In this document: one piece after another, positions 3,786-36,219 of the stretch
Position numbering within the stretch: position 1 is the stretch's first letter
How the letters are laid out: each line of letters opens with the position of its first letter
Virus record (IMG/VR): IMGVR_UViG_3300035698_022190
Coordinates: 62,001 to 126,000 of that record
Length of the DNA stretch: 64,000 bases
Strand: one strand, 5' to 3'
Notes under the pieces: model-generated
The model's input: only the letters and a program-made list of their open reading frames with translations
What the model was told of the DNA's origin: nothing
Databases searched by the model: none
Translations under genes and position numbers: made by a program

Positions 3786-3883
3786 AGGCCCTAGGTGTCA
3801 GATGGGTGACAGTGAGTCTTCAAAACTTTTCCCCCTTGTGTCCAAAGCAAGGTGCGTGGGTTCAATTCCTACAGGGCCTGCCA
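3786..3883 (+). tRNA. Opal suppressor tRNA (anticodon UCA), probably Trp-accepting
   Basis: Acceptor AGGCCCT/AGGGCCT-G-CCA, loop CTTCAAA (TCA at 3820-3822), T-arm GTGGG-TTCAATT-CCTAC, long variable arm. Confidence 0.85.
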
Positions 3884-8035: not shown

Positions 8036-9910
8036 ATGCCTGTCAGAAACGTGACTGAGGCAGATCTAGAACAGATTACGAGTAAAAAATACCCTAATCC
8101 GTTTTTTGATTTAGCCAACAATTACATTCCTAAAAATATTAAAACCCTTTTTAAGTTTTGTAGAGCCTATTTTTATACAAATGGTTTTCTACGAAACGTT
8201 GTTACTAAACTTACTGAGTATCCTATAACAGACATTTTATATGGCACCATTGATCCTGCCGCAAAAGAAAAATATGATGTAGCTTTATATGAAAAATTAC
8301 ACATTAGAAAATTTCTAATTGAAATTGGGCTTGATTATTTTACTTTCGGCAATGCTTTTGTATCCTTTAATATGCGATTTAAAAGATTTTTAAGATGTAA
8401 AAATTGTAACCATACCTTAACTATTGATGAAGCTTCTTTTAAAATGAGAAATTTTGAGCTTGAGTTAAAATCCTGTCCTAAGTGTCAAATGAAAAATGCA
8501 CCCACGGAAATAGAAGACCAAGAGATTAAATCAATAGACTCTTTTAATTTAGTAAAGTGGGATCCAGTAAATTTAGATATTGATTATAATCCATTAACAG
8601 GATCATCTACATATTATTATAACATCCCAGGTAAAATAAGACAAAAGATTATGGCTGGGGATAAAAAAACTATAAAGGAAGTACCAAAAGTTTTTCTAGA
8701 AGCTATAAAAAAGAAGAAAAAAATTGAACTAAATGCAGACAATATTTTCCATTTTAAACGTCCCACTCTTGCCGAAGATGATATGGGATGGGGTAAACCA
8801 ATTATATTGCCAGCATTAAAAGAATTATATTATTTAGCAACATTACGAAGAGGTAATGAAGCGATAGCTAATGAACACATTGTGCCTAAAAAAGCGGTGT
8901 TTCCAGCTAATACAACTACTATGGATCCGTTCACTCAAATGAATTTAGGTAAATGGTCCGGACAAATTCACAACCAAATAAAGAAGTGGAAGGCGGACCC
9001 TAATCATATTGGGGTGTTCCCCATACCTATTGGTTATCAAGAATTAGGTGGAAACGCTCGAACTTTACTATTAACACCGGAAATGAAGTTTATTGAAGAA
9101 TCTGTTATTAATAGTTTAGGAGTACCTTTAGAGTTTATTAAGGGCGGAACATCCTGGACAGGTTCTAGTATTTCATTAAGAATTGTTGAAAATCATTTCT
9201 TAGTTTATCGTGGGTTATTGGCCGACTTTTTAAACTTCTTTGTAATAAAAAAATTATCAGCCCTTTTGTCTTATCCACCCGTTAAGGTTCACTTTAAAGA
9301 TTTAAGAATGACAGATGATACAGAATCAAAACAATTGGCTATAAATTTAAATGCCGGCAATAAAATTTCTGATCATACTTTATTATCTCAATTAGGATAT
9401 GATCCGGAACATGAGGAATTTGCTAAAAAACAAAGTTTTGCTGATGCTCTAGCAGCTGAGATTGAAACACAAGAAACCCAAGCTGAGGCACAAGGTAAGG
9501 CACAAGTTATATTAGCTAGATATAATACTAGGGCCACAAAAGCTGCAGAAGACGAAGTATTTAGATTAAGAGCTGAGTTATTCCAAGATGAATTAAACAG
9601 AGAATTGGGGGCAATCCCTGAGGATCCAATGAAGTTAATTGAACGGTACGCAGTAATGATGTTAAGTATGCCGGAAGCTCAAGCTAAAAAGGAACTACAG
9701 CAATTAGCAATTAAATTGCCTACAACTTATACTCTTGTAAATGAGAGAATCCAAATGATGATGATGGCTAGTATGGAGGGCGAAGAAGAAATGGAAACAG
9801 TAAAATCTTCTGAAGCTCCAAACCAAAAAAAAGTCGGAACCCGTGAAGGGGATAAAGTAAAAATAAAAGGTGAGCGCCACAAAGGCTCCACTAAAGGACA
9901 ACCAAATTAG
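8036..9910 (+). CDS. Putative portal protein with Zn-ribbon insertion
   Basis: Portal-like motifs (DYFTFGNAF, IFHFKRP..GWGKPIILPAL, INSLGVPLEFI..G), CxxC..CxxC, size and context. Confidence 0.7.
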   Translation: MPVRNVTEADLEQITSKKYPNPFFDLANNYIPKNIKTLFKFCRAYFYTNGFLRNVVTKLTEYPITDILYGTIDPAAKEKYDVALYEKLHIRKFLIEIGLDYFTFGNAFVSFNMRFKRFLRCKNCNHTLTIDEASFKMRNFELELKSCPKCQMKNAPTEIEDQEIKSIDSFNLVKWDPVNLDIDYNPLTGSSTYYYNIPGKIRQKIMAGDKKTIKEVPKVFLEAIKKKKKIELNADNIFHFKRPTLAEDDMGWGKPIILPALKELYYLATLRRGNEAIANEHIVPKKAVFPANTTTMDPFTQMNLGKWSGQIHNQIKKWKADPNHIGVFPIPIGYQELGGNARTLLLTPEMKFIEESVINSLGVPLEFIKGGTSWTGSSISLRIVENHFLVYRGLLADFLNFFVIKKLSALLSYPPVKVHFKDLRMTDDTESKQLAINLNAGNKISDHTLLSQLGYDPEHEEFAKKQSFADALAAEIETQETQAEAQGKAQVILARYNTRATKAAEDEVFRLRAELFQDELNRELGAIPEDPMKLIERYAVMMLSMPEAQAKKELQQLAIKLPTTYTLVNERIQMMMMASMEGEEEMETVKSSEAPNQKKVGTREGDKVKIKGERHKGSTKGQPN

Positions 9911-12727: not shown

Positions 12728-12734
12728 TACCGAC

Positions 12735-13031: not shown

Positions 13032-13036
13032 TGTGT

Positions 13037-13270: not shown

Positions 13271-13276
13271 TTTTTT

Positions 13277-13565
13277 TTAACTATACTAAAGAAGTGATAA
13301 CTTCTTTTCTAAGGAGAAAATGTATATTCCTGTCAACCGGTTAGAGACCGGTCGATTAAAATTTTAGACAGCGGGATTCCAAAGAAGACCCGAAGAATCC
13401 TGAGGGGCTTCTGAGAATCAGATGTTCTAAAATTGTTAATCCAAGACCGGGTGCTTACCGGTAGGAGTATATACTTCATCCGTGGTGTGGCAAATTGCTT
13501 CACCCTCAATAGAGACGAAACGTCCCCAACAGTGTTTACACACTGGATAAGAAAACTATAGTTAA
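13277..13565 (-). ncRNA. Retron-like msr/msd cassette D
   Basis: IR TTAACTATA/TATAGTTAA, G13556 opposite G13286, hairpin GGGACG-UUU-CGUCUC, long hairpin 13321-13472. Confidence 0.78.
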
Positions 13566-13578
13566 GTTTTGTTGTTTG

Positions 13579-13820
13579 ATAATTATACTAAATCCCCTAG
13601 GGGATTGGTCATTCAAGAGGTTTTGAGCCGTTGCTCTGCTCCCGGTAGTTAAAACATCTCTGATTTAACTGGCGGGTGGAGATCAACGGGCTACGAAACC
13701 TTTTGTCCATATACCGCTGTTCTACCCCATTAGTGCGGGATATGTAATTAAGACTTTAATAGTCTACCTGCAAGAACGAATCATTCTTTCTGGATATTGC
13801 TTCCAATGTACTATAATTAT
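13579..13820 (-). ncRNA. Retron-like msr/msd cassette C
   Basis: IR ATAATTATA/TATAATTAT, G13811 opposite G13588, hairpin AAGAAUG-AUU-CGUUCUU, long hairpin 13614-13705. Confidence 0.78.
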
Positions 13821-14035
13821 TCAAATTTGTTTATGTTCTTTTCTTCTTGTAGGGACAACTTATAATATTCTGTTATTAGTGGTCTTAGTTCTCTGATACC
13901 TTTTCTAGCGGGTCTTCCATATTTTTTTATACCAAATAAGAAAAATCGCTTATGTGGATGACTAAATTCCTCTAGCTTTGCCTTAATATCTTTTACTATA
14001 TCATTAGTTGTTCTTACGCTTGTACTTTGTTCCAT
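13817..14035 (-). CDS. Small basic protein, histone H1-like (Hc1-type) candidate
   Basis: G.K..GRPARK..REL..LI.EY.KLS pattern resembles Bacteroidota Hc1-like proteins. Confidence 0.45.
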   Translation of the reverse strand: MEQSTSVRTTNDIVKDIKAKLEEFSHPHKRFFLFGIKKYGRPARKGIRELRPLITEYYKLSLQEEKNINKFE

Positions 14036-15193: not shown

Positions 15194-15787
15194 TTATCGT
15201 TTCTTTTTAGGAACTTCTATTGTACAATACATAAATAAAAATCTTCTACATTCTCCGAGAAGTTTTTGTATTTGGATTCTTATTTTTTTAGTATCTTTAG
15301 TCCCTAAGGAACTAGAGATTGTGGTTTTTTTATCCGTCCATTTATAAGTGAAGCCTCTTTGTTTTGAAACACGTCTCGCTGCCGGGACTTTATAAAAGGT
15401 TTGACTTAATCCTAAACGTCTGCGACCTTTTGTATTTTCAATACATAGACGCATATATTCATTTTGTGAGTATCTAGTTATTTCAGTAAATTCGTGTTTT
15501 ACAATCCCTTTAAACTCTATAAATTGGGTTGCGGGTGTTTTGAACTGACTCCACCCAAAAGGTAAATATATTTCTATTAAAGCTGGAAATTCTAGTTTAT
15601 TATAAGCTTCAAATAAAGTTAGGAAGTCAGTTTCCCATAAGCTTTCAGTAGCTGCTTTCCCCGATGGGGATTCAGGCTGTTTATCCACTCGATCTGGCCC
15701 CGTATTTTCTGCCGATCCTTGAGCTGTAACTTTACGGAATCTTTTGATAGATTGAATAGCTTCGCCCTCAGATTTCTCCACTTCCAT
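15194..15787 (-). CDS. Basic hypothetical protein overlapping RT 3' end (candidate RT partner); start uncertain
   Basis: Open frame directly downstream of and overlapping RT. Confidence 0.6.
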   Translation of the reverse strand: MEVEKSEGEAIQSIKRFRKVTAQGSAENTGPDRVDKQPESPSGKAATESLWETDFLTLFEAYNKLEFPALIEIYLPFGWSQFKTPATQFIEFKGIVKHEFTEITRYSQNEYMRLCIENTKGRRRLGLSQTFYKVPAARRVSKQRGFTYKWTDKKTTISSSLGTKDTKKIRIQIQKLLGECRRFLFMYCTIEVPKKKR

Positions 15788-16521
15788 TTGGGTACTCCTA
15801 ATTTATCATTGACTACTACACCTGTAACGCTCATTCTTCTGTGAGGTCGCATAATGCGTGTTTTTTTATAATTTAATTTAAAGCCCTGTTCTTTTATTAT
15901 ACCAATAATTTCAGCAATATCATCAACCGTAAATTCATATTTTGGCGCTGGGTGAGAGAAAGCCAAATCATCCGCATAACGTGTATATGTTAGCCCACGT
16001 TTTTTGCTGAAAGTTTGCAAAGCTATGTCCATTTTCATACTAATTAGATTAGCCATTGCTGGACTAGTCGGAGCACCCTGAGGTAAACGATACTTATAAG
16101 TGACCAGCTCTGCTAATAAAACAGCAGCGTTTGTTGAAAATTGAAATTCTTTATCCCTGGCTTCTAATTTTTTTCCTAAATAAGTTATTTCTCTTACAAC
16201 ATGGTTGAAGCTTACAGTATGAAAAAAATTACTTAGGTCCATACATAAAATAACTTTGTTCCCTAAATGTCTTTTTGCACCAGTAGATACACCATAATTT
16301 TTTCTAAAGCCTACTGCCGCACCATGTGGTCGAAATCGATATAAAAATTTATATAAAATAGACACTTGTAAATCTTTTAGTTCTTGTTGTGGCGCGTCAA
16401 TCCAACGTTTCTTTCCATTAGATTTTGAGATTGGATAACTTAAATAATGGTTCTTTTTATCCATTATTACTCTTGTAAGCTCATCCGCGCTCTTACCTAA
16501 CATGTCATATATTGTTGCCAT
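15619..16521 (-). CDS. Retron-type reverse transcriptase
   Basis: K.NGKKRWIDAP, GAKRH (region X), DLSNFF, LPQGAPTSP, YTRYADD, VTG (region Y); start probably ATG 16521. Confidence 0.95.
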   Translation of the reverse strand: MATIYDMLGKSADELTRVIMDKKNHYLSYPISKSNGKKRWIDAPQQELKDLQVSILYKFLYRFRPHGAAVGFRKNYGVSTGAKRHLGNKVILCMDLSNFFHTVSFNHVVREITYLGKKLEARDKEFQFSTNAAVLLAELVTYKYRLPQGAPTSPAMANLISMKMDIALQTFSKKRGLTYTRYADDLAFSHPAPKYEFTVDDIAEIIGIIKEQGFKLNYKKTRIMRPHRRMSVTGVVVNDKLGVPKWKWRNLRAKLFNLSKDSVKLQLKDRQKIRGQIEWINSLNPHRGKQLLKAYGKLTS

Positions 16522-16566
16522 TTTCGTAGTTATCTCTTTTATAGGGCGCAGCAAAGCTACGCCCTT

Positions 16567-18384: not shown

Positions 18385-18389
18385 ACTTT

Positions 18390-18418
18390 AATATACACAT
18401 GATTTATATATTTGTCAA
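18390..18418 (-). promoter_or_regulatory. Intron-internal sigma70 promoter TTGACA-N17-TATATT
   Basis: Perfect -35; ATG 5 nt after -10 box. Confidence 0.75.
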
Positions 18419-18427
18419 GTTTTTTTT

Positions 18428-19521
18428 ACCTCTGGTTCACCCGTCATACTTCCACTATTATCAATACAGCAAATAATTGGGCCTTTGGCTTTTCGTTCTT
18501 TACCTCTATATTCATATTCAGTTAAGCTTCGTTCTGCAAATCCTTTATAAAAAAGCATTCGTAAAATCGGGTGCTTAATTTTCATCAGCTCAGTAGGAAT
18601 AAGTCTACGTAAGTTATTACCTAAGCGTAACTTATACACACTCTCAATACCCTTTTTAACTTTTTCTCTCATTGTAGAGAGGGCTAAACGTCTATATCTG
18701 CCTGCTAAAGCTGCAATTTTTTTTAACTTATCTGAACTTTTTAATTCATTAATAAGTTTAATTTTCTCTTGATATCCGGTTGATGAATAAGTAGGATCTT
18801 GCTCCAGTCCCCAATTGGTAATTAGGTCGGAAGTCTCTTTAGTTTGAGAAACTGTATGTTCTAACATCTTTGTTGTTGCACGACGTACGCGTCTCTCTCG
18901 TTTATCCTTATGTGTTTTTAAATGCTCTTCTAAACGTTTTTTTGCTTCTTTTAAAGTCCATGCTTTGTCAGCATTTGCTTTATCTTCGGCTTGTTTTTTT
19001 TCTTCATCAGTCCCTTCTCCGGCTGCAATTGCTTCCTGCTTTTTCTTTAATTCATCATCAGCTTGTTGCTGAGCTTGTTGCATCCCTTCGGCTGCTGATG
19101 CTAATTGCTTCTCAAATTCTTCTCTTAGCTCATCAACTAATTTTTTTACTTCTTCGCCCAAAACTTGTGTTCCTATAGTTGACTGAATTTTATGAAGTCT
19201 TGTTAAGTTTCGTAACTCCTTATATTTAACAGAACGCATCAACTCATCCATAATTTGACTATTTAATAAATAATCATAATCAATATCCATTTCTGGATAT
19301 TTCTGAGGGGTGTATTTATATAATGAATCAAACACATCTTGATGTAATTCTTTAAATTGAGGATAGTCAACTTGACCTTCTTCATAGGTATTTGCGATAT
19401 CGGGATTATGAAACCTTACTTCACTAAAAGCTCTTTTATCAAAAGCATCTAACTTAATTACATTCTTTTTAATACGAACTTCTTTTGTAACATCTGTTAT
19501 CTTAACCGATAATTTTCGCAC
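18428..19521 (-). CDS. VWA-domain protein (ViaA-like), exon 1
   Basis: LGNNLRRLIPTEL, KGPIICCIDNSGSM (DxSxS). Confidence 0.88.
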
Positions 19522-19530
19522 TCTAGCCTC

Positions 19531-20661
19531 CTATTTAAAAGTTAATCCTACTCGTTTATAAATGTCAACTAAGTAATCTTCAATATCGTTTTGAAGTTTA
19601 ATAACATATTTTACATCTTTGCCACGACTCTTTAAACTAGTTTCATATGTATGAAGTTCTTCGCTAGCTTCTTTTAGCTTATTAGCCTTTTCAACTGCTT
19701 CTGTTGTTAAAGCAACAGTCTTTGGATCTAGATCCATAAAATCTTTATAGATATCAGTTGCGTCATCAAATAATTCATCCATCTTGTTTTTATCAGGATT
19801 AATTTTTGTGAGGATATGGCTATAAATAGTTTTCCTATGATCAGGGTCCGACCACAGACAGTGCTGTAAGATGTCAAAATCACTTTCTCCTACCGCATCT
19901 CTGCCATTGAAAAAAGCTTCAGCTTTTAAAATATTTCGAACGGTCATGTATGTTCTGTCCGACACATAAGTGCCGTCGTCATTAATCATTGTTCGCAGCT
20001 CAGCTAATAAATTTTTATCAGCCTCAGCAATTTTTATTTTTTTTACTGCCTTCTGTGCTTTACGCATTTCCGCTAAGGTTAACACCGCATCTTCTTGAAA
20101 TTCTGGAATTTCTAACATTTTTATAAAGTTAGCAGATTCTGCAATAGGTTGTGTATAAAATTTTATTACAAACCTATCAAGCATTGCTTCGAGATCGTCA
20201 CCTTCTTCGGGAAGCTCATTAGAAGCCCCTATCATTGCTAATAATGGAACCTTAATTGGCAGCCCATTATTGTAAAATATACGTTCGTTCATCATTGTTA
20301 ATAAGAAATTAGCAACCCCTGTGTTTCCTTTATATACTTCATCTACAAAGGCAAAGTCTGCTTGCGGCATCATATTATCTGTGTTTCTTATATACTGGTC
20401 GTTTTCTAAACCTTTTAATGAAAAAGGCCCTGCTAACTCCTCTGGGGTAGAGAAAGAATTTAGCATCCAACTAAAATATTTTGCACCAGTAATTAATTGA
20501 CTATAATAATCTACTAACATTGATTTGGCAATACCGGGACGACCTAGCAATAAAACGTTTGTTCCTGCGAGTATCCCTAAAGTTATACCATGTACTTCTT
20601 GGTCTCGCTCTATTAAATACTTATTTAGGGTGTTTTCCACTTGTTGGAATTTTTTATACAT
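19531..20661 (-). CDS. MoxR/RavA-family AAA+ ATPase
   Basis: GRPGIAKS Walker A, FVDEVYK Walker B, GASNELP, LDRF; GAGGT RBS before ATG 20661. Confidence 0.9.
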   Translation of the reverse strand: MYKKFQQVENTLNKYLIERDQEVHGITLGILAGTNVLLLGRPGIAKSMLVDYYSQLITGAKYFSWMLNSFSTPEELAGPFSLKGLENDQYIRNTDNMMPQADFAFVDEVYKGNTGVANFLLTMMNERIFYNNGLPIKVPLLAMIGASNELPEEGDDLEAMLDRFVIKFYTQPIAESANFIKMLEIPEFQEDAVLTLAEMRKAQKAVKKIKIAEADKNLLAELRTMINDDGTYVSDRTYMTVRNILKAEAFFNGRDAVGESDFDILQHCLWSDPDHRKTIYSHILTKINPDKNKMDELFDDATDIYKDFMDLDPKTVALTTEAVEKANKLKEASEELHTYETSLKSRGKDVKYVIKLQNDIEDYLVDIYKRVGLTFK

Positions 20662-21053
20662 TAATACCTCGTTTGTAGGATTGGAAAGTGTATATTGACT
20701 TGTCTTCGTTTTTGACAGAAAATCCAATATCTGTGTTTTAAATCTCTGCTTGCTGTATGCTCTCTATCTTTGGTATGTGTCATCAAGCCCTCAATTGTAT
20801 CAAACTCATGTGGGTAGATGTTACACACATAGCTGGGTACAGTTGCGTGAATATCAGCAAAACCTAAATTAATGTGTGTAACTAAACCCAAAGTATTCTC
20901 ATGTATTGATAAAGTACAAGCTGAGATATGATCAGACGTGGAAGAATATGTAAGTATGCTATCTTCTTCAGACACTATCTTATGTTTTCGTATCCACGGT
21001 GTCTGTTTTATCTCCTTTATCAGTTTCTTTTTCGTTGTCATTTTTCTGTTCAT
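20661..21053 (-). CDS. Hypothetical protein
   Basis: ORF whose stop overlaps the MoxR start. Confidence 0.5.
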   Translation of the reverse strand: MNRKMTTKKKLIKEIKQTPWIRKHKIVSEEDSILTYSSTSDHISACTLSIHENTLGLVTHINLGFADIHATVPSYVCNIYPHEFDTIEGLMTHTKDREHTASRDLKHRYWIFCQKRRQVNIHFPILQTRY

Positions 21054-21273: not shown

Positions 21274-21302
21274 TTGATTTTCAGCGTTGAATGCCTTATA
21301 TT
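21274..21302 (+). promoter_or_regulatory. sigma70-type promoter TTGATT-N17-TATATT for RNAP gene
   Basis: Matches recurring pattern. Confidence 0.6.
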
Positions 21303-21367
21303 TAAATGAATAGAGTTCTTATAAGGTAATAGTATCCGGAATTGAAAACGTCTCTATTGGGACAAAA

Positions 21368-21377
21368 TTCTTATACC
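21368..21377 (-). promoter_or_regulatory. Phage motif GGTATAAGAA (putative promoter; also at 34233, 43398, 46374, 49850, 52102)
   Basis: Six exact 10-mers, all upstream of minus-strand gene starts. Confidence 0.7.
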
Positions 21378-21405: not shown

Positions 21406-24400
21406 ATGGCCAATAATTTACTTCGACATGATGCGCAGAATGCAGCAATTCAACGCGCACTAAAAAAATCTATACAAGAATCTTTCCCTATTGAATCCGG
21501 GGACAAAAAGCTAACGCTTACCAACATTCAAATCCCAAATACCCTTGAGAGTTGAGACTTTCCCAAACAAAAAGAATTTAAGCTAAATCGCAAAAGCTGG
21601 CAAGTCCCTATATATGCGGATATAAAAATTACTGACGTGAATGGTACCCGTATTATTAGTCAAAAGAAAAAGGCTAAAATAGGAAATATCCCCATCTTAA
21701 CAAATAGGTTTACTACAATTATTGATGGTAACGAGTATCAGACAACAAACCAGCTTCGTCGTAAATCTGGAATTTACTCTCATGTAAAACAAAATGGTGA
21801 GCTTGAGAGCGAATTTAATCTTGCCCAGGGTTTTAATTTCAAGATGCAATTAATTCCAACTACACAACTATTTGTGCTTATTTTGGGTAATCGTAAGTAT
21901 CGTTTATGGACCCTATTAAATGTTTTGGGCATGGATGATAAATCTATTGAAAAATTTTGAGGTAGATCTTTACTAGATATAAATAAAAAAGGTGCTTTAA
22001 ACACTGAAGTATCAGAAATGACTTCTATTTTTAAGAAGGTCTACAACAGAGAGCCGAAAGACTATAAAGAAGTATTAGCAAAGCTTAATGAATATTTTAA
22101 TATATATACAAAAGTAGATCCAGAAACCACAAAATTTACATTAGGAGAAAGTTTTGAGCATGTTACTGCCAAGACTCTTTTATCTGCTTCAAAAAAACTA
22201 TTAGCTATAAACAAAGGAACCGCAGAGCCAGATGAGCGTGACAACCTAATCTTTAAAAAACTCTATTCAGTTGAAGATCTGCTAGGTGCCCATTTTGAAA
22301 AACAAATTCCTGTTATTTCACGTAAACTGGCTCGGTCCTTATCACTAAAAGATAGCGTGGGAGAGATAATTAGTTCCAGCACTTTTGGTAAAACCGTTAA
22401 AGAATTCTTTACAACGGGCGATCTATCAGCCACACCACCACAAACAAACCCAGTAACTATTGTAGATGCTTGGCGCAAAACCACACCTATGGGTACGGGT
22501 GGTATACAAAGTCGACACTCCATTACAATGGAATCTCGTAATTTACAACCTACACATTTAGGGTATCTAGACTCATTGGCAACCCCTGAATCTGGACGTG
22601 TTGGTGTCACGGTGGGTCTAGCATCCGAAGTGGAAAAAGAGGGCAACGATATGACTACCCCGGTGTACACGCCGGCTGGTAAAGAAAAAAGATTAAAACC
22701 TCTAGAATTTTATAATGCCAAAGTAGGGTTTCCTGATCAATATAAATTTGAGGGAAAGGCTCTTATGCCTAAGAAAGGAAAAATTAAATCAATGTATAAG
22801 GGGGATCTTGTGGAGCTTGATTCTACCGAAATTGATTATTATCTTCGATCAGCTAAAACGATGTTCTCGTTTGCTACCAATTTAGTTCCCTTCATAGCTA
22901 ACACACAGGGTAATAGAACTTCCATGGGATCTAGAATGATGGTTCAAGCTATGTCCCTGGTCGATAGAGAGGTTCCTTTAGTACAAACTAAACGTTCTGA
23001 TGGTGAAACCTACGAAGATCTTTTAGGTAATTATTTAAACCCTGTTCTTGGTGTAAATGAAAAAGGTAAGCCTTATAAAACAGCTAAGGTAACTAAAATA
23101 GCCAATGACTACGTACATTTAGAAACCCCGGGTGGTATTAAATTAAAGCGTGGTTTATATAAAAATTTTCCACTGAACCAAGACGGTTTTTTAAATTCAA
23201 CTTCTTTAGTAAAAGTAGGAGACTCTGTCACTACTTATCAACCTTTAGCTGAGAATAATTATTCTCGTGGTAAAACACTTGCATTAGGTAAAAATTTAGT
23301 TGTAGCATATATGCCATACAAAGGATATAATTATGAGGATGGGGCCGTTATTACAGAATCTGCTGCCCAGAAATTATCGCACCAGATGATACATAAGGCC
23401 AACATCTTCTTTAGCCCTAAACTTACAAACTTTAATATTAAGAAATTCTTGGCCTGGTATCCAGACACTGTCAAGCAAGATAATTTAGCTAAACTGACGG
23501 AGGAAGGGCTTCCTAAAGTGGGCCAAATTTTTCAACCTGGGGAGTATTTGGCTGCCTATCTCGTTGAAAAAGATATGGATGATATAGATAGAGCTTTAAA
23601 AAAATTAGACAAACATACGTTCAGTCAATATGCTAAAAAACTTGTTGAATGGGATGAAGATGAGCCTGGGACAGTTATTGATGTAAAAAAAGTTGGACGA
23701 AATATAGACATATATATAAAAGCAGTTCATCCTTTTAAAGAAGGTGACAAACTTTCAGGAAGGTTCGGGAATAAAAATATTGTAACCAAAATTATTCCTG
23801 ACGATGTTGCCCCACATAGGAAAGATGGCACTCCTGTGGAAATTATGCTGAACCCACATGGGGTCCCATCACGTATGAATATTGGGCAGCTTCTAGAGAC
23901 AGCTGCTGGCAAAATCGCTGTAAAAACAGGTAAGCCTTATATCGTTGATAATTTTTCCGACCCTAATGACGATACATCAAATAGAGTATATGATGAGCTA
24001 AAAAAACACGGCCTTGAAGCAGATGAAAAATTAACAGATGGGACAACCGGAGAGGCTTTTGATAATAAAATTTTTGTAGGAAATCAATACTTCCTTAAGC
24101 TGCGCCACATTGTTAAAAAGAAACAAGGGGTCCATAGTTATGGTAGCTATGATGTAAATGAGCTTCCTGTTGGTAGAGGGGCGCAAAAGACAGGTACTAT
24201 GGAAACCTATGCTTATTTAGCACATGGAGCTAAAGCAAACTTAGCTGAAATGTCAACCGTTAAAGGACGCTCTAATGAAGAGTACTGGCGTAATCTTCAA
24301 CTAGGGTTGCCGCCCGTCCCGTCAAACAAAAATTTTATTTTTGATAAAATGTTAGCCCATTTAAAGGGGGCTGGTATTAATATTTCAAAGAAAGGAAATA

Positions 24401-27400
24401 AATTAAGAATTTTTCCTTTGTCAGATAAAGAAGCAATCAAAATGTCTAATGGCGAAATTAAGGATCCCGGAGCCTTTCTGGTAGGTAAGAATTTAGCTAC
24501 TAGAAAGAATGGACTATTTGATCCAGAAATTACTGGAGGCTTAGCAGGAACACATTGGTCACATATTAAATTAACAACAGCCATACCAAACCCAATGTAT
24601 TCAGACGCTATAATGAAGATATTAGATTTAACCGAAGCACAATTAAATGATACCATTGCTGGGAAATTTAAGGTTAATGGTAAAACAGGTGCTCCCGCCA
24701 TTGTTGCTGCTTTAAAAGAAGTAAATGTAAAAACAGAGATTACTAGCTTAAAGAAAGAATTAAAAACGGCTCCTCCTACAAATGTGAATAAACTAAACAA
24801 AAGAATTAGATATTTGCAGACTTTAGATGAGTTGAAATTAGGAGCTGTAGACGCATATACGATGAAAGTTGTGCCGGTATTACCGCCTGCATTTAGGCCC
24901 ATATATCCTTTACAGACGGGCGATCTAATGATCAGTGATTTAAATAAACATTATCGTGATATTGGTACAATTAATATTGCGTTGAAAGGAGCGAAGGAAG
25001 ATTTAAGTGCTTCGGAAATGGCGGAGGCTACAACCTCTCTTTATAATTCAGTAAAAGCTTTACAAGGTTTTATTGATCCAATAAATTATTCAAGTAAAAA
25101 ATACAAAGGTATTATAAAAGAATTGTCCGGTAAGCAAGCTCTAATTCAAGGGGCAGCTTGGGCAAAACGTCAAGACATTAGTGCACGGTCAACTATTACT
25201 GTGGAACCAAGTTTAGGTCTTAACCAACTAGGATTACCTACAGATATGGCCTATAAAATGTTTAAACCTTTTGTTATACAAGATTTAAAAACCCAGGGTT
25301 TAAAGGCCTCCACTGCTTTAAAAGAGTACCAAGATAAAACAAACTTGGCTTTTAACTCATTAAGGAACGTAGTAAAAAATAGACCTATAATTCTAAATCG
25401 AGCACCATCGCTCCATAAGCACTCTGTTCAAGCTTTTTGGCCCCAATTAATTACCGGCAAAGCTATCCAAATGAACCCTTTAATTATGAAAGGATTTAAT
25501 GCGGACTTTGATGGAGATACTATGTCAATTATGACACCCGTTAGTGCTTTAGCTGTAGAAGAAGCTAAGGGAATGCTCCCGAGTAAAATTCTTTTTAAAC
25601 ACGGAGATAATTCTCTTGTTCCTACAATAGACCAGGATTATTTATATGGTTTGCATGCGCTAAGCCAAGTTGAAAAAGTATCTGCCAAGAAATTTTCAAC
25701 TATAGCAGAAGCGAAAAAATCGGGAATTTCTTGAACGACACAATTTAAATTAAAAAATAAAAATATGACTATAGGTCAATACTATTTAAATGATAAATTG
25801 CCTCCATCTTTAAAGGACTTTTCCAGAATTCTCAATAAAAAGTCTGTGCGTGATATATTAACGAAGGTCGGAAAAGATCATAAGGGTTACTTTGTTGGGC
25901 TAATTAATTCTTGGAAAGATTTGGGCGGTTTCTATGCTTATAAAGTAGGGAATACCATATCATTAACTGATTTTGCAAACAGTAAGTCTTATCGTGACGA
26001 CATTATTAAGAAAGAAATGCCAGCTATTAATAAATTAAAAGGTAAGGCACGCATAGATGCTCTTAATCGCTTAACAAAAGATGTACAAAAAGCACAAGAC
26101 AAAACTTTTAAGGGCAAAAATAATATGTATAAAATGTTGATAGCTGGATCATTTTCAAAGCCTGATTCAGTGCGACAAATTTTATCTATGCCGGGTGTTT
26201 TAAATGACTTATACGGCAAACCGATTTCAATTCCTGTAACTAAAAGTTATGGAGAGGGTCTTGATTCAGCAGGCTATTTTACATCTTTATATGCGGTTCG
26301 AAGCGGAACTGTTGATAGATCAGTAAATACACAAGATACGGGGGCTTTAAATAAAACATTATTAAATGTGACCCGAAGGTTATTAATTACAACAGAAGAT
26401 TGTGCAACTCGAAAAGGTTTAGATCTTCCTGTGAATGGTAAAAACGTCTTAGATCGATTTATACTGGAAACAATTCCGGGAGTTGTAAAACGTAACCAAT
26501 TAGTAGATTCACAGACATTACTGAAATTAAAAGCAAAGGGAATAGTTACCGTAAAAGTTCGTAGCCCACTTACATGTGAAGCTGTCGAAGGCATTTGCCA
26601 ACATTGCTATGGTTTATTACCAAACGGTCAGTTACCTTCTGTAGGGACAAACGTTGGTGTGTTGGATGGACAAGCATTGACTGAGTCATTTACCCAGAAT
26701 GTTATGCGTACCTTCCACACCGGCGGTACTGCTCTAGGTGGGGGCGGGGTTACTGAGGGCTTCCCTCGAATGGAACAGTTATTAAAAGTTCCAGAAAAAC
26801 TTAGCCATAAAGCTACTTTAAGCACTGTTAAAGGAATAGTAAAAACTATTTCAAAGAATTTAACAGGTGGATATAACCTTCGTATTGAGGGATATGGTAC
26901 TATAAATGATAAAGATTTTGTTATTCCCCCAGGACGTTCCCCTATTGTAAGTATTGGGGACAAAGTAGAGCCTGGAGATCCATTAAGCGATGGCGTAATT
27001 AAGCCACAAGAATTGGGAGCTTTGACAACACACTTAGAGGCACAAAATTATCTTGTAGATGAAGCTTCTCAAGTAATGGGAGGAGGTTTCTTCCGTAAGA
27101 CATTTGAAACAGTTATTCGTGGTATCTCAGATAATGCTGTTGTGACTGAGGCTCCGGATAGAAGTGGTTTTTTACGTGGAGATAAAACAACAAAAAGCTA
27201 TATAGATAAATTAAATAGAGATCGAAAAAAAGAGAAATTAGAGCCCATTAAGTATAACTCATATTTTAAATCAATTGACACATTAAATACAGACTCAGAT
27301 GATTGGCTTACAAAAATAACTTCTAACAGAATCAAAGCCGCTCTAATGACAGGAGCAGCTAAAGGTCAATATGCAAACTTAAAGGGAAAAGACCCTATAC

Positions 27401-27465
27401 CCGCATATATCTACGGAGAAAACTTTGGTAAACAAATCATGCCAGATAAAGGAGAATTTTACTAA
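21406..27465 (+). CDS. Single-polypeptide fused beta-beta' DNA-directed RNA polymerase (~2019 aa); 3 TGA read as Trp
   Basis: One frame with TGA at 21553, 21958 and 25732; TPESGRVG, GYNYEDG, GDKLSGRFGNK, NPHGVPSRMNIGQ, LNRAPSLH, NADFDGD, RSPLTC..ICQHCYG, MRTFHTGG. Confidence 0.93.
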
Positions 27466-28673
27466 TGAGTAAATTTTTTAAGGAAGCAAAGAAGAAAAAG
27501 AAAAATACAAAGTTTAGAAAAGCTATGCAAAATATGGGTTTTGTAAATTCACTACAAGCTAGTCGAGTTAAATGGCCCAATGATTATGCTATGAAGGATA
27601 AGGATTTTACTGATGTTATTTTTGGAGCTTCTCCAGCCAATAATATGGCACAATCATTTATGCAGGGTAAAAAACTTGATACCCTGCAACTAAAAGAAAA
27701 AATTGAGTCTTTAATTAGTAAAGGACATGCCAAGCAAATTGGTACAAAACAAAAATATCTCTTAGTTGGGTACTTGTTTGAATATACATCAAGACGAGGT
27801 AAATTAGAAAGTATAAAAGGTATTCCAAAAGCAAACGTGAAAGGACTTGCTCAAGCTATTCGTAAGACAGAGAATAAATTAGAGCCTATCGATGGTACAG
27901 CGGGTATGACAACTATGGGACTTATTTTGGCTAATATTGGTATTGGTTTGTCTTTATCTGGTTTAAAAGAAGATAGTACAAGTCAAGGAATTCAGAGTTT
28001 TATTAGTACGGCTAAAAAAAGAAACAACATGCCTAATCTTGAATTAAAAATGATTGACAATCCTTTAGAAAGCCATTTTAACCCTAAAACGAATTATATA
28101 CAAACAGGTAGAATTAAAGGAATAGCTGCACATGAATTTGGGCACGCAATTAATTCTAAACGGTTCGGGCAAATCTTTGGTAAAAAACCAGGGGCCGCAA
28201 TTTCTGCTGGCCTATATCACGGGTTAGCTGATTATGTACCTATGGTGGGGCGCTCATTAGGCACACTTGGTATGGTTCCTATGTTACCCTTGGCAGTCGC
28301 CGCCCCATTAGCTATTTCGGATAAGCTGCAAAAAGCTATAAAAGGAAAAAGACGAAAAAGTATGCGTTATAGGGTAGGTAAATGGGTAGAAGACCATCCC
28401 GGAAGTTTGATGGGTGGTGCTATGATTCCTAAGCTAATAGAAGAAGGTAGTGCTACGGGAAGAGGTATGGCTGAAATTTTACGACAAACCCCCAAGCCAC
28501 AACAATTGGCCGCACTAAGAAAAGGTCTTGGTGCTACTGGTCCTGCTTTTCTAACCTATGCAACAATAGCTGGCATACCGGCAGTTGCAGGATGAGCTTT
28601 TGGTAAAAAACGTAAGATACAAAATAAATTAAAGACGCAGGAAAAGAACGAATTTCCTTTCAAAGTAAAATAA
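27465..28673 (+). CDS. Virion-associated protein with HExxH metallopeptidase-like motif; TGA 28593 read as Trp
   Basis: AAHEFGH...EE..A; readthrough ends at TAA abutting the next ATG. Confidence 0.7.
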
Positions 28674-30062
28674 ATGTCTAAATTTTTTAAAATTGCTTCG
28701 GAACTACAGCCACAACAAAAACGTGTGCTCAAAAAACTTGAGACTACCGATAGACTTTTGGTATATCATGGTTTAGGTTCTGGTAAAACTTTAACAGCTT
28801 TAAAAGCTAGTGAAAAGTTTAAAATGCCTATTACCGCTATAGGTCCGGCAGCTTTGAAAGAAAATTTTGGTAAAGAAAAAAGAAAGCATGGGGTAAAGGG
28901 CGCTCGTCCTAAATATTTTACTTATAGTAAACCTCCTAAAAATATCCCAGAAAAAAACATTGTTGTTTTTGATGAAGCACATCGCATGGGTAGAATGGAA
29001 TCTCAAAGATCCCATTATCCAGACAAATACAAAGGCGCTAAAACTCTTATGCTTACCGGAACACCTATCCGTAATGAACCTTCTGAATTAATTCCAATTA
29101 TGCGTGGGCTAGACATTAAAGTTCCACGCGATAAAAAGAAATTTGATGCTGGGTTCATAAAAGAAACTAAACAATACCCAGGTCTTTTTGCTAGAGTATT
29201 TAGAGGGGTAAAACCAGGTGTTATTAAACGAGGTAAAAATTTAGACATTTTAGAGAACGCTTTTAAGGGTAAGGTAGATTACCAGGGTTCAACGGAGAAA
29301 GGCCATCCTAGGGTCACTAGCGAGCGAATAACGACCGTTATGACCGATAAGCAGCGGGCAGCTTATAGAGTAGCTTTAAAAGGATCCGCTAATTTAAGAT
29401 ATAAAGTTAAACATGGCATATCACCAAGTAAAACTGAAGCACGCAATATGAATGCCTTCCTGACAGCTACAAGACAAATATCTAATAAACCTGGTAAATT
29501 TAATTTAAGTGCAACTTCTGCAGATGCCCCCAAGTTAAACAGAGCAATGAAAGAAATACAAGAACGATACACGAAAGACAAGAATTATAAGGGAGTTACT
29601 TATTCAGCTTTTCTTGCTCATGGTATAGACCCAATGGAAGATAGGCTTAAGAAATCTAAAATTCCATATGCCCGATTTACGGGAGAGACCTCAGATAAAG
29701 ATCGCAAAAGAATTATTAAAAGCTTTAATACCGGAAAAACTAAACATCTATTACTATCAGGAGCAGGCGGGGAAGGTTTAGATCTAAAAGGCACAAAACT
29801 ATTACAAGTTTTAGAGCCGCATTGGAATGATCCAACTATTCAACAGGTAAAGGGGCGCGTTAATCGCTATAAGTCCCATGCGCATCTTCCAAAAGGCGAA
29901 CGCAATGTCCGCATACAAACATTTATTAATAAACCACAAAAAACAAAGTTTTTTAGACGTCAGCATAAAGGAACAGATGAATATTTAGAGATGCTGTCAA
30001 AACAAAAAACACAACTTAACCAAGATTTTCTAAAAACATTACAGAGGGCATCAGATGGGTAA
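28674..30062 (+). CDS. SF2 (SNF2-like) helicase/ATPase
   Basis: HGLGSGKT, DEAH, LTGTP, GEGLDL, QVKGRVNR. Confidence 0.88.
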   Translation: MSKFFKIASELQPQQKRVLKKLETTDRLLVYHGLGSGKTLTALKASEKFKMPITAIGPAALKENFGKEKRKHGVKGARPKYFTYSKPPKNIPEKNIVVFDEAHRMGRMESQRSHYPDKYKGAKTLMLTGTPIRNEPSELIPIMRGLDIKVPRDKKKFDAGFIKETKQYPGLFARVFRGVKPGVIKRGKNLDILENAFKGKVDYQGSTEKGHPRVTSERITTVMTDKQRAAYRVALKGSANLRYKVKHGISPSKTEARNMNAFLTATRQISNKPGKFNLSATSADAPKLNRAMKEIQERYTKDKNYKGVTYSAFLAHGIDPMEDRLKKSKIPYARFTGETSDKDRKRIIKSFNTGKTKHLLLSGAGGEGLDLKGTKLLQVLEPHWNDPTIQQVKGRVNRYKSHAHLPKGERNVRIQTFINKPQKTKFFRRQHKGTDEYLEMLSKQKTQLNQDFLKTLQRASDG

Positions 30063-33487: not shown

Positions 33488-33541
33488 CTATTTGTTTCCT
33501 TGTTTTATATTGTTTAATACATATAACTCTTTTTATATGTG

Positions 33542-33943
33542 TGGAGCTGCGGGTATCGAAACCCGGTCCGAAATAAAGTCCCATAGAACCTTAATTACAA
33601 GTATTATATCTCGATATAAGGAGCTCGGCGTTCGAGATCAAAACGTTTGTGAGCTAATACTAGTTTCATTTTTGAATTGGGAAATTGTAGCTAAACACCA
33701 ATTATGTCTACATGGTTAGACGTTATAGACCCCGCCAAGCTTTCATGTTTCTCGGTAAGCTTTACGTCACATTAGCTAACCCGCGTAAGCGAAGTTAGAA
33801 TGACCGACTTGCCCTTGAGCAAGTAAGTTCACTGGTATGTTTTTGCCAGTTATTGTTTGTTTTTGAATATGTTTAACGAGAGAAATTCATTTCTCGACTT
33901 GTAGTTTTATCTTCTCTTATCCCGTCGAATCCAATTCAGCCCC
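33542..33943 (-). ncRNA. ssrA: tmRNA
   Basis: 5' GGGGCTGAATTGGATTCGAC, 3' T-arm and GCTCCA, ATAACT-GGC resume site with tag ORF. Confidence 0.93.
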
Positions 33944-36144: not shown

Positions 36145-36219
36145 TGGAAGCCCCGAGTGGTGTCGAACCACTGTTGCCAGGATCAAAACCTGGTGTCATG
36201 CCGTTAGACCACGGGGCCA
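36145..36219 (-). tRNA. tRNA-Gln(UUG)
   Basis: Cloverleaf, loop TTTTGAT, CCA. Confidence 0.9.

What the first reader, a model, noticed from the sequence alone, without database searches (positions are those of the whole stretch)
21406..27465. Compact single-chain beta-beta' RNA polymerase gated by opal codons
Seen: beta motifs and beta' motifs (NADFDGD, trigger loop MRTFHTGG) lie in one ~2019-aa frame. Known: bacterial beta plus beta' total ~2700 aa, and phiKZ-like phage RNAPs are split rather than fused. Inference: a minimal fused enzyme, perhaps packaged in the virion, whose synthesis needs the suppressor tRNA (first TGA at codon 50).
Basis: partly seen in the sequence, partly recalled or inferred. 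Interest (0 to 1): 0.68.

Follow-up and report, generated by a model that had tools for sequence, protein, structure and literature searches.

The report
Single-chain phage RNA polymerase, TGA-recoded
A 210-kb salt-lake phage encodes both large subunits of a bacterial-type RNA polymerase as one 2019-residue protein, read through three TGA codons that mean tryptophan; it belongs to a large, barely studied phage lineage whose cultured relatives carry the enzyme in the virus particle.

Summary
Window 21406-27465 (+) is one 2019-codon frame with three in-frame TGAs (codons 50, 185, 1443). It holds a complete, trimmed bacterial-type beta (aa ~1-995) joined head-to-tail to beta' (aa ~1000-2019). TGA means Trp: codon 185 lies on an invariant Trp column, and 17 of 26 TGAs in this gene and five relatives lie on Trp-majority columns. 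The window is part of a complete 210-kb phage record.

The fusion is not a curiosity of this genome. At least 874 clusters (50% identity) span the same junction. They form one phage clade apart from bacterial beta'. I take that clade to be the "mReC" lineage (Weinheimer & Aylward 2020), which was described only as two subunits. Two-gene relatives are nested inside it, and the one whose boundary I mapped is cut at a non-canonical site, so they look like secondary fissions.

"Gating" is only partly supported. TGAs mark the structural, + strand gene class genome-wide, and several close relatives have none in this gene. Virion packaging is inferred, not shown. In Salmonella phage Arash the homologous polymerase, a sigma factor and the neighbouring SNF2 helicase are all virion-associated by mass spectrometry. 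This phage has one sigma-70-family gene and no alpha or omega.

The parts
21406..27465 (+). Single ORF for the fused beta-beta' RNA polymerase (2019 aa, TAA stop), read with TGA=Trp
   Evidence: There are full-length homologs of about 2010-2030 aa without stops, and 77 IMG/VR loci carry one continuous frame.
21406..24390 (+). Beta module (aa ~1-995). It includes the catalytic-lysine segment GDKLSGRFGNKNIV (aa 780-793, nt 23743-23784) and a diverged rifampicin-pocket segment (aa ~334-367).
   Evidence: aa 57-956 align to cyanobacterial beta 84-1045. aa 901-994 align to E. coli beta 1237-1338 of 1342.
24403..27462 (+). Beta' module (aa ~1000-2019). It has NADFDGD at nt 25498-25518 and the trigger loop MRTFHTGG at nt 26704-26727. 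The second Zn site (C1666, C1724, C1731, C1734) is kept; the N-terminal Zn-binding domain is absent.
   Evidence: aa 1075-1937 align to C. difficile beta' 173-1101 of 1188. The AlphaFold model of aa 850-1250 is confident across the junction and matches bacterial beta' N-termini.
21553..21555 (+). In-frame TGA, codon 50
   Evidence: Trp in the closest homolog P0002; the column is variable elsewhere.
21958..21960 (+). In-frame TGA, codon 185
   Evidence: The column is an invariant Trp in all 20 aligned homologs.
25732..25734 (+). In-frame TGA, codon 1443
   Evidence: The aligned residue is Trp in 7 of 20 homologs, including the closest, and aromatic or hydrophobic in most others. A contig from an independent run covers it without any difference.
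3786..3883 (+). tRNA with anticodon UCA, the presumed opal-decoding Trp tRNA. It is 98 nt with a long variable arm, and is the only tRNA on the + strand.
   Evidence: ARAGORN finds it. It has A1-U72, G73 and the same first four acceptor pairs as the phage tRNA-Trp(CCA). In Rfam it scores only 32.5 bits to tRNA-Sec, below the gathering score.
28674..30062 (+). SNF2-family helicase in the same + strand block, two genes downstream of the polymerase
   Evidence: Pfam SNF2-rel_dom and Helicase_C. The best phage hit is Arash Gp217 at 35% identity and 97% coverage. Gp217 lies next to Arash's beta'C gene and is virion-associated (PMC10585845).
27465..28673 (+). 402-aa ORF of unknown function whose start overlaps the polymerase stop by 1 nt (one TGA)
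   Evidence: It has no homolog in 77 related loci, so it is probably not a conserved subunit.
8036..9910 (+). Portal protein homolog; the portal-to-polymerase linkage is conserved across the lineage
   Evidence: 32% identity and E 1e-81 to Arash Gp204 portal, and homologs upstream of the polymerase in D69 and L112. It lies upstream on the same strand in most of the 77 loci.
21368..21377 (-). One copy of the GGTATAAGAA promoter-like motif. It points away from the polymerase gene, toward the TGA-free - strand genes.
   Evidence: The genome has 20 copies, all on the - strand and nearly all between genes. The window has 6, against 0.17 expected by chance.
21297..21306 (+). Candidate + strand motif CTTATATTTAA, about 100 nt upstream of the polymerase start (weak lead)
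   Evidence: Similar copies lie upstream of the tRNA(UCA), the major head gene and other + strand genes, but the count is 18 on + against 13 on -.

Best explanation
Shown: the gene encodes one polypeptide that is a complete bacterial-type RNA polymerase catalytic core. The beta module (aa ~1-995) is joined almost without a linker to the beta' module (aa ~1000-2019). All catalytic elements are intact: the beta lysines, NADFDGD, the bridge helix, the trigger loop and the second Zn site. The beta' N-terminal Zn-binding domain and the lineage-specific insertions are gone. The three TGAs are read as tryptophan. The phage uses TGA=Trp mainly in its + strand structural and packaging genes, and this gene belongs to that class. 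The enzyme belongs to a large phage-only lineage that I identify with mReC. In that lineage the single-chain form is widespread. The two-gene relative whose boundary I mapped is cut about 95 residues inside canonical beta', which indicates fission of a fused ancestor.

Inferred: the polymerase is made late, once the phage tRNA(UCA) is available. It is then packaged into the capsid, probably with the phage sigma-70-family factor and the SNF2 helicase, and injected. In the next host it transcribes the TGA-free - strand genes for replication, sigma and the tRNA array from TGGTATAAGAA promoters, which look like extended -10 elements. It would do this without needing alpha or omega, because the covalent fusion replaces their assembly role. 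It is predicted to be insensitive to rifampicin.
For: Architecture and catalytic motifs. Junction fold with pLDDT 83, confident through the join. TGA=Trp: codon 185 on an invariant Trp column, and 17 of 26 TGAs on Trp-majority columns when only 13 of about 2000 columns are such. No predicted gene ends in TGA; 180 end in TAA and 58 in TAG. One tRNA(UCA) has a Trp-like acceptor stem and discriminator base. Late-class membership: 145 TGA to 272 TGG on + strand ORFs against 20 to 271 on the - strand, Fisher p 9e-20. The + strand blocks hold baseplate, tail fibre, large terminase and protease-like genes. The TGA-free - strand genes hold ribonucleotide reductase, DNA polymerase, sigma, primase, helicase and ligase. 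Family size and fusion. Phage clade apart from 13 bacterial beta' sequences, with separate-subunit forms nested inside. Non-canonical fission point. Packaging by analogy: Arash Gp206 (beta plus beta'N) is the most detected virion protein, and Gp216 (beta'C), sigma Gp10 and helicase Gp217 are also detected (PMC10585845); YerA41 polymerase subunits and sigma are particle-associated (PMC7354516). The orthologous portal-polymerase-SNF2 gene order is seen. This genome has a single polymerase copy, one sigma gene, and no alpha or omega. Promoter-like motif. Rifampicin-pocket substitutions follow from the alignment plus established resistance positions (E. coli Q513, D516, H526, S531).
Against: There are no proteomic or RNA data for this phage or its close clade; no RNA run holds it. 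The cultured relatives share only about 30% identity and carry the enzyme in two pieces. The sigma gene lies in the early, TGA-free class, not beside the polymerase. The promoter-like motif resembles an ordinary sigma-70 extended -10, so host polymerase could serve it. The structure test of sigma binding gave no answer. The tRNA(UCA) is atypical: it has a long variable arm and scores below Rfam thresholds, so its charging with Trp is inferred from codon positions only. Relatives with no TGA in this gene show that the recoding is not integral to the enzyme.
Confidence: 0.6

Rival explanations
1. Non-virion late polymerase. The single-chain enzyme is made in mid or late infection and, with the phage sigma, transcribes only the + strand late genes. 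Host RNA polymerase with host sigma-70 transcribes the early - strand genes from the extended -10-like TGGTATAAGAA promoters.
For: TGGTATAAG matches the bacterial extended -10 consensus TGnTATAAT at 5 of 6 hexamer positions plus the TG (established promoter knowledge). The sigma gene is in the TGA-free class that can be translated at once. A different AT-rich motif lies upstream of several + strand genes, including this one. Nothing in this genome shows packaging directly.
Against: In Arash and YerA41 the homologous polymerase and sigma are abundant in purified particles. The gene is linked to the portal gene across the lineage. The + strand motif has weak statistics, 18 on + against 13 on -.
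Confidence: 0.3
2. The TGAs are true stops and the locus encodes several separate polypeptides (49 aa, about 107 aa, about 1238 aa and about 566 aa), giving a split polymerase like those of phiKZ-type phages.
For: Standard-code gene callers produce exactly such fragments for relatives, for example P0128 (1026 aa) and P0073 (1553 aa). The third TGA lies near the place where Arash and D69 are split.
Against: The TGAs sit on Trp columns, one of them invariant. Sequence is conserved straight across each TGA. Standard-code relatives have one uninterrupted ORF. The L111 'fragments' all share one 2024-codon frame with 5 TGAs. No gene in the genome ends in TGA. A tRNA(UCA) is present. A stop at codon 50 would cut off conserved N-terminal beta sequence.
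Confidence: 0.03
3. Cellular contamination: a bacterial rpoBC fusion from an organism that uses genetic code 4 or 25, wrongly assembled or binned as a virus.
For: Related contigs have been binned into MAGs of Bacteroidales, Dependentiae, Gemmatimonadaceae and Saccharibacteria. Natural rpoBC fusions exist in some bacteria (own knowledge).
Against: The record is a 210-kb virus rated 100% complete, with large terminase, portal, baseplate and head genes. Those MAGs carry their own ordinary rpoC elsewhere. The phage enzymes form a clade separated from 13 bacterial beta' sequences by a fully supported branch. TGA use is confined to one gene class rather than spread over the genome.
Confidence: 0.01

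Closest known systems
mReC: multimeric-RNAP-encoding Caudovirales (Weinheimer & Aylward 2020, Nat Commun, PMC7481178)
   Same: Both are uncultured large Caudovirales from aquatic and sediment metagenomes. Their beta and beta' are recognisable with cellular HMMs and carry NADxDGD. Both form a deep phage-only clade apart from bacteria, with the polymerase genes among structural hallmark genes. In my tree the window groups with 1004-1025-aa beta' proteins that sit next to a separate beta gene. That is the arrangement tabulated in the paper.
   Different: The paper describes and tabulates two proteins per contig, for example 904 + 1011 aa. It mentions fusion only for crAssphage. Here, and in at least 874 clusters, the two are one chain. 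The paper's text does not use the words sigma, virion or genetic code. I could not check sequence identity with the paper's own contigs.
Salmonella phage Arash Gp206/Gp216 (PMC10585845); Vibrio phages D69, D181 and D148; Yersinia phage YerA41 (Sepahanvirus)
   Same: They share the polymerase lineage (about 30% identity over 95% of the length). They share the gene order portal, small ORF, polymerase, SNF2 helicase. Each also has a phage sigma factor. Arash and YerA41 supply the only proteomic evidence, and it places the polymerase and sigma in particles.
   Different: In Arash and D69 the enzyme is in two pieces: beta plus beta'N (about 1525 aa) and beta'C (about 610 aa). The pieces are separated by inserted genes, which include homing endonucleases in D181 and D148. 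Arash and D69 give long uninterrupted matches and annotated ORFs under the standard code. Their hosts are Enterobacteria and Vibrio.
phiKZ- and AR9-type jumbo-phage multisubunit polymerases (PMC7598289, PMC7824862)
   Same: These are also phage-encoded two-barrel polymerases related to cellular beta and beta', and one set is packaged in the virion.
   Different: In those phages beta and beta' are each split into two or three polypeptides. There are two paralogous sets. No sigma is found in phiKZ-group phages, and the proteins are far more diverged from bacterial enzymes. Here there is one chain, one copy and a sigma-70-family factor, with E-values near 1e-90 to bacterial subunits.
Single-chain two-barrel phage polymerases: the crAss-like and phi14:2 gp66 virion polymerase, YonO, and the P23-45 tape-measure-fused polymerase
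   Same: Both double-psi beta-barrels lie in one polypeptide, and some of these enzymes are virion-delivered.
   Different: Those enzymes have no readily detectable sequence similarity to cellular beta and beta' (as stated in PMC7481178) and lack most cellular domains. This one keeps the full bacterial domain order.
Natural rpoB-rpoC fusions of Helicobacter and Wolbachia, and engineered E. coli beta-beta' fusions (own knowledge, not tested here)
   Same: The join is the same head-to-tail beta C-terminus to beta' N-terminus. This shows that a covalent fusion is compatible with function.
   Different: Those are cellular enzymes of about 2900 aa that work with alpha2 and omega. This one is a phage enzyme about 30% smaller, in a genome with no alpha or omega.
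Stop-codon-recoded phages (reviewed or tested in PMC11210395 and PMC9523058)
   Same: An in-frame stop codon is reassigned, a phage suppressor tRNA is present, and recoded codons concentrate in structural and late genes while early genes stay compatible with the standard code.
   Different: Most described cases are gut phages that read TAG as Gln. This is TGA read as Trp, in a salt-lake jumbo phage of the mReC lineage, and its tRNA(UCA) has an unusually long variable arm.

Membership tests
mReC lineage polymerase (PMC7481178) | Encoded on a Caudovirales genome with hallmark structural genes | tested here: met
   Large terminase, baseplate wedge, head protein and tail-fibre-like genes; portal homolog; virus record rated 100% complete.
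mReC lineage polymerase (PMC7481178) | Beta and beta' recognisable with cellular profiles, with NADxDGD present | tested here: met
   Pfam Rpb2_6 at E 1e-64 and Rpb1_2 at E 1e-27; NADFDGD at aa 1365-1371.
mReC lineage polymerase (PMC7481178) | Clusters with phage sequences, apart from cellular homologs | tested here: met
   The phage clade is separated from 5 and then 13 bacterial beta' sequences with support 100. The tree used only a 360-column beta' fragment, without archaeal or eukaryotic sequences and without the paper's own sequences.
mReC lineage polymerase (PMC7481178) | Beta and beta' as two separate proteins of at least 800 aa, as in every row I read of the paper's table | tested here: not met
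   One 2019-aa ORF. For this reason I file it as a variant of that kind. Truly separate relatives exist (L112).
Cellular bacterial RNA polymerase core | Two catalytic double-psi beta-barrels with the beta lysines and the beta' DFDGD, plus bridge helix and trigger loop | tested here: met
   Alignments; conserved columns.
Cellular bacterial RNA polymerase core | Alpha dimer and omega as partner subunits | tested here: not met
   PF01193, PF01000 and PF01192 were not found in the phage genome, while the controls rang in 14 of 14 genomes. Use of the host's alpha or omega cannot be tested here.
Cellular bacterial RNA polymerase core | Beta' N-terminal Zn-binding domain (four Cys) | tested here: not met
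   No conserved Cys in aa 1000-1075. The N-terminal roughly 172 residues of bacterial beta' correspond to about 75 residues here.
phiKZ-type jumbo-phage polymerases | Beta and beta' each split into several polypeptides; two paralogous sets (virion and non-virion); no sigma | tested here: not met
   Single ORF; a single copy of the beta and beta' domains in the genome; a sigma-70-family gene is present.
TGA-to-Trp recoded phage (genetic code 4) | In-frame TGAs at positions that are Trp in homologs | tested here: met
   17 of 26 TGAs lie on Trp-majority columns, and 5 lie on Tyr-majority columns. One of the Trp columns is invariant.
TGA-to-Trp recoded phage (genetic code 4) | A phage-encoded tRNA that reads UGA | tested here: inconclusive
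   ARAGORN finds one tRNA(UCA) with a Trp-like acceptor stem and G73. It scores below the Rfam gathering thresholds and has a long variable arm. Its charging cannot be tested here.
TGA-to-Trp recoded phage (genetic code 4) | TGA not used as a terminator; recoded codons enriched in late or structural genes | tested here: met
   Stop codons are TAA in 180 and TAG in 58 predicted genes, and TGA in none. The strand and class bias has Fisher p 9e-20, and the classes were annotated.
Virion-packaged polymerase | The protein is detected in purified particles | not testable with these tools
   Only analogy is available: Arash Gp206, Gp216, Gp10 and Gp217 and the YerA41 subunits, plus the conserved gene order.

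The most novel reading that the evidence does not exclude
The single-chain beta-beta' protein is the ancestral and dominant form of a whole phage polymerase lineage. With one phage sigma factor it forms a self-sufficient, alpha- and omega-free, rifampicin-insensitive bacterial-type holoenzyme. That holoenzyme is packaged in the capsid and injected to start infection. In the recoded subclade, TGA=Trp acts as a timer, so that the polymerase destined for the next generation's virions is translated only after the phage tRNA(UCA) has accumulated. The published 'two-subunit' mReC enzymes would then be secondary fissions, and in recoded genomes partly artefacts of gene calling.
Probability: 0.35. Interest if true: 0.72.

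Novelty: new variant of a known kind. Interest (0 to 1): 0.55.

Why it matters
If the single chain plus one sigma factor is active on its own, it would be the smallest known sigma-dependent, bacterial-type RNA polymerase. It would also be encoded by a single gene. That makes it an attractive object for structural work on how alpha and omega can be dispensed with. It could also serve as an orthogonal transcription module with a short promoter.

For phage biology, it points to a third way for large phages to be independent of host transcription, beside the T7/N4-type single-subunit enzymes and the fragmented phiKZ-type enzymes. For evolution, the non-canonical cut site in the mapped two-gene relative suggests the lineage began fused. 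This bears on the claim that these enzymes branch deeply.

There is also a practical consequence. TGA-recoded members are chopped into false 'subunits' in public protein sets (for example P0128 and P0073). This distorts surveys that require separate beta and beta' proteins.

Tried and rejected
- Sigma binding: complex prediction on the beta' N-terminal region (aa 1076-1440) with the phage sigma gave a score of 0.00, reported as 'no answer'. It is evidence neither for nor against binding.
- Suppressor tRNA in relatives: a DNA search for the tRNA(UCA) in five related genomes found nothing. Relatives either use a different suppressor or it is too diverged.
- Rfam on the window: no hit for the tRNA(UCA) at gathering thresholds, and only a sub-threshold tRNA-Sec match.
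- Release factor and Trp-tRNA synthetase genes in the phage: none found.
- Alpha and omega genes: none found.
- RNA evidence: no RNA run holds the sequence. The laid DNA contigs are short and low-depth and only confirm the letters.
- Reverse transcriptase and GC-rich stretch at 12-17 kb: no Rfam family and no repeats of 40 nt or more.
- Whole-genome 9-mer enrichment for a + strand promoter returned only coding tandem repeats. The motif YTATATTTAA found by eye is not clearly strand-biased.
- Literature: searches for a described fused rpoBC in phages found none. Two jumbo-phage reviews do not mention this enzyme type.
- Rejected readings: TGA=Gly (code 25) or Sec, because the TGAs fall on Trp and aromatic columns; and membership of the phiKZ-type family.

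Full report
**1. What is in the sequence**

Window 21406-27465 (+) is a single frame of 2019 sense codons that ends in TAA. It is interrupted only by three TGAs, at codons 50, 185 and 1443. The window is bases 62001-126000 of a 210,208-bp IMG/VR virus record rated 100% complete.

Pfam finds beta domains followed by beta' domains in the same frame: Rpb2_3 and Rpb2_6 (E 1e-64), then Rpb1_1, Rpb1_2 and Rpb1_5. phmmer against PDB gives E 2.5e-91 to bacterial beta' and E 2.6e-78 to beta. Contigs of four independent salt-lake metagenome runs are identical where they overlap, including across the third TGA.

**2. Genetic code**

I read TGA as Trp only because the genome shows it.

- In an alignment of 21 full-length homologs, codon 185 falls on an invariant Trp column. 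Codon 1443 aligns with Trp in the closest homologs, and codon 50 aligns with Trp in the closest one.
- Across this gene and five recoded relatives, 17 of 26 in-frame TGAs lie on Trp-majority columns and 5 more lie on Tyr-majority columns. Only 13 of about 2000 columns are Trp-majority.
- Genome-wide, no predicted gene ends in TGA; 180 end in TAA and 58 in TAG.
- There is exactly one tRNA with anticodon UCA, at window 3786-3883. It is the only tRNA on the + strand.
- Its acceptor stem (A1-U72 and the first four pairs) and its discriminator G73 match the phage's own tRNA-Trp(CCA).
- It also has a long variable arm and scores below Rfam thresholds. Its Trp identity therefore rests on the codon positions, not on the tRNA itself.
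- The phage encodes no release factor and no TrpRS.

**3. Anatomy of the protein**

Residues 57-956 align end to end with cyanobacterial beta. Residues 901-994 align with E. coli beta 1237-1338 of 1342. The beta module therefore runs to the natural C-terminus of beta.

Beta' similarity resumes at about aa 1000. Residues 1075-1937 align with C. difficile beta' 173-1101 of 1188, and the alignment to 7l7b_D reaches 1131 of 1161. The join is head to tail with essentially no linker. An AlphaFold model of aa 850-1250, built on 42 homologs, has pLDDT 83 and pTM 0.75. It is confident straight through the junction and matches bacterial beta' N-termini.

What is missing:
- The first ~172 residues of bacterial beta' correspond to only about 75 residues here, and this stretch has no conserved cysteines. 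The N-terminal Zn-binding domain is therefore absent.
- The rest of the shortening is spread over small deletions and the lack of lineage-specific insertions.

What is kept:
- The second Zn site (C1666, C1724, C1731, C1734), the clamp helices, the bridge helix and the trigger loop.

The total is 2019 aa. That compares with about 2260 for the smallest beta plus beta' chains among my PDB hits and 2749 for E. coli. 'Compact' is fair, but it means trimming rather than a new architecture.

The rifampicin-pocket segment is replaced at the classical resistance positions. E. coli Q513, D516, H526 and S531 correspond to A, P, A and T here (alignment; resistance positions from established knowledge). 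I therefore predict insensitivity to rifampicin.

**4. Partners in the genome**

The genome holds one copy of each module. It holds one sigma-70-family gene with regions 2 and 4, at genome 10611-11423 on the - strand. No alpha or omega was found, while all 14 control genomes rang. A structure-based test of sigma binding gave no answer.

**5. Gene classes and the 'gate'**

- ORFs of at least 150 aa on the + strand carry 145 TGA against 272 TGG. Those on the - strand carry 20 against 271 (Fisher p 9e-20), and most of those 20 lie in doubtful ORFs.
- The + strand blocks encode baseplate wedge, a 2588-aa tail-fibre-like protein (32 TGAs), large terminase (8 TGAs) and a protease-like protein.
- The TGA-free - strand genes encode ribonucleotide reductase, DNA polymerase, sigma, primase, helicase, Sak4 and ligase.
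- The motif GGTATAAGAA occurs 20 times in the genome, always on the - strand and nearly always between genes. The window has 6 copies against 0.17 expected. With the T that often precedes it, the motif reads like an extended -10 element.

The polymerase gene, with 3 TGAs among 14 Trp codons, belongs to the recoded structural class. Full-length protein does need UGA decoding, since the first TGA is at codon 50. The TGAs are not a device specific to this gene, however. Orthologs in the closest clade have 0, 1, 2, 4, 5 or 11 TGAs, and more distant members had none in the matched gene in all but one of the eight I counted precisely.

**6. The family**

- A search of 5.8 billion proteins returned hundreds of homologs of about 2010-2030 aa at 35-68% identity, on contigs up to 228 kb. 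Many are lengthened by inteins.
- IMG/VR gave 197 matching stretches. Of the 77 loci kept, all but two (L029 and L079) carry the gene as one continuous frame.
- A 401-residue query spanning the junction found 874 clusters (50% identity) at E 1e-30 or better. Nearly all of the top 150 match it in one stretch; a few are N-terminally cut fragments such as P0128.
- The portal gene lies a few kb upstream on the same strand in most of the 77 loci, and in Arash, D69 and L112.
- In the window's lineage, an ~11.5-kb - strand insert separates portal and polymerase. It carries a glycosyltransferase, a reverse transcriptase, an HNH endonuclease, an unknown protein and a MoxR ATPase.

**7. Relation to what is published**

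Two jumbo-phage reviews do not mention such an enzyme. The closest description is the mReC clade (PMC7481178). It comprises 97 Caudovirales contigs whose beta and beta' branch apart from cellular homologs. In the two parts of its supplementary table that I read, every row lists two proteins per contig, for example 904 + 1011 aa. Its text mentions fusion only for crAssphage.

- In my trees of a 360-column beta' fragment, the fused proteins, the Arash and D69 proteins, and beta' proteins of 941-1025 aa not called as fusions form one clade. Five of these (1004-1025 aa) form one tight group. The phage clade is separated from 13 bacterial beta' sequences with support 100. The separate forms are nested among fused lineages.
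- Bacterial beta' sequences share 55-69% identity with one another. Phage-to-bacterium identity is 25-39%, whatever the phylum.
- One truly separate case, L112, has beta (1096 aa) and beta' (1011 aa) overlapping by GTGA in different frames. The boundary corresponds to window aa ~1092, about 95 residues inside canonical beta'.
- The four other members of its clade begin at about the same point. That is what a fission of a fused ancestor would leave.
- Arash and D69 are cut elsewhere, at about aa 1400-1480, with inserted genes between the pieces.
- Some 'separate subunits' in public protein sets are artefacts. P0128 (1026 aa) is the last piece of a 2024-codon frame with five TGAs. P0073 (1553 aa) is carried on a 210,263-bp contig, the length of the contig behind L016, whose gene has one in-frame TGA.

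**8. Function**

The direct evidence comes only from distant cultured relatives.

- In Salmonella phage Arash, Gp206 (beta plus beta'N) is the protein with the most spectra in purified virions. Gp216 (beta'C), sigma Gp10 and helicase Gp217 are also detected.
- In YerA41, polymerase subunits and sigma are particle-associated.
- The window's SNF2 helicase (28674-30062) has Arash Gp217 as its best match among phage records, at 35% identity over 97% of its length.

Four facts point to a virion-delivered, sigma-dependent polymerase: that proteomic evidence, the portal linkage, membership of the late recoded class, and the presence of a single polymerase in the genome. I consider this the most likely function. 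It would start infection on the TGA-free - strand genes.

The main rival has host polymerase reading the extended -10-like promoters and the phage enzyme serving late genes only. I give it 0.3.

**9. Verdict**

Packaging and timing are inferences. The enzyme is a variant of a known kind, the mReC and Arash-type phage polymerases, and not a new kind. The prevalence of the single-chain form, the non-canonical fission site and the recoded subclade do not appear in the literature I could search.

The host is unknown. The habitat is salt lakes, and a 56%-identical relative sits on a 204-kb contig binned with a Bacteroidales MAG, which is weak evidence.

Noticed in passing
window 3786-3883 (+): The tRNA(UCA) is atypical. 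It is 98 nt long, with a roughly 24-nt variable arm and a 3-bp D stem, yet has a Trp-like A1-U72 pair and G73. It is the only tRNA on the + strand, scores below the Rfam thresholds, and no similar sequence was found in five related genomes.
   Followed up: partly
window 21368, 34233, 43398, 46374, 49850, 52102 (all - strand); 20 copies in the genome: GGTATAAGAA, often preceded by T, reads like an extended -10 element. It lies upstream of - strand genes that lack TGA. The window has 6 copies against 0.17 expected by chance.
   Followed up: partly
window 2430, 2645, 3586, 21297 (+) and others: A candidate + strand motif, YTATATTTAA, lies upstream of the tRNA(UCA), the polymerase gene, the major head gene and others. 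The sequence is AT-rich and the strand bias is weak (18 on + against 13 on -).
   Followed up: partly
window 15619-16554 (-) and 12000-14000: A reverse transcriptase gene (RVT_1, E 7e-21) lies near an ORF-poor stretch with 44.7% GC. I found no Rfam family and no long direct repeats there. A relative (L111 1484-2374, - strand) also has a reverse transcriptase gene just upstream of its polymerase gene.
   Followed up: partly
window 18388-20727 (-): A MoxR-like AAA+ ATPase and a 377-aa unknown protein form a divergent pair directly upstream of the polymerase gene. The pair is conserved throughout the closer clade.
   Followed up: partly
window 1-2398 (+); whole ORF at genome 56632-64398: A giant 2588-aa tail-fibre-like ORF carries 32 in-frame TGAs, the densest recoding in the genome. 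The genome's most over-represented + strand 9-mers are repeats of the GGAACATCG type; I assume but did not check that they lie in this ORF.
   Followed up: partly
window 33539-33943 (-) and 36145-45601 (-): A phage tmRNA and an array of 24-26 tRNA genes, including an ordinary tRNA-Trp(CCA), all lie on the - strand among TGA-free genes.
   Followed up: no
homologs P0003, P0008, P0012, P0030 and others; locus L016: Inteins and homing endonucleases (PF14528, PF14890, PF05204) are inserted in many polymerase homologs and stretch them to 2300-3700 aa. Homing endonuclease genes sit between the polymerase pieces in Vibrio phages D181 and D148.
   Followed up: partly
L111 3100-9174; proteins P0128 and P0073: Public gene calls of TGA-recoded relatives cut the polymerase gene into false 'subunits'. 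In L111 the pieces are 63, 175, 598 and 1026 aa.
   Followed up: yes
L112 4714-11400: In a truly two-gene relative, beta (1096 aa) carries the first ~95 residues of canonical beta'. A 127-aa ORF with a weak Sigma70_r4 hit follows beta'.
   Followed up: partly
window 27465-28673 (+): A 402-aa ORF whose start overlaps the polymerase stop by one base. It has no family hit and no homolog in 77 related loci.
   Followed up: partly
L093-L097 (genome contigs): Phage-sized contigs of 170-204 kb that carry the fused polymerase are binned into MAGs of Bacteroidales, Dependentiae, Gemmatimonadaceae and Saccharibacteria. These MAGs have their own ordinary rpoC elsewhere, so this is probably mis-binning and at best a weak hint of the host.
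   Followed up: partly
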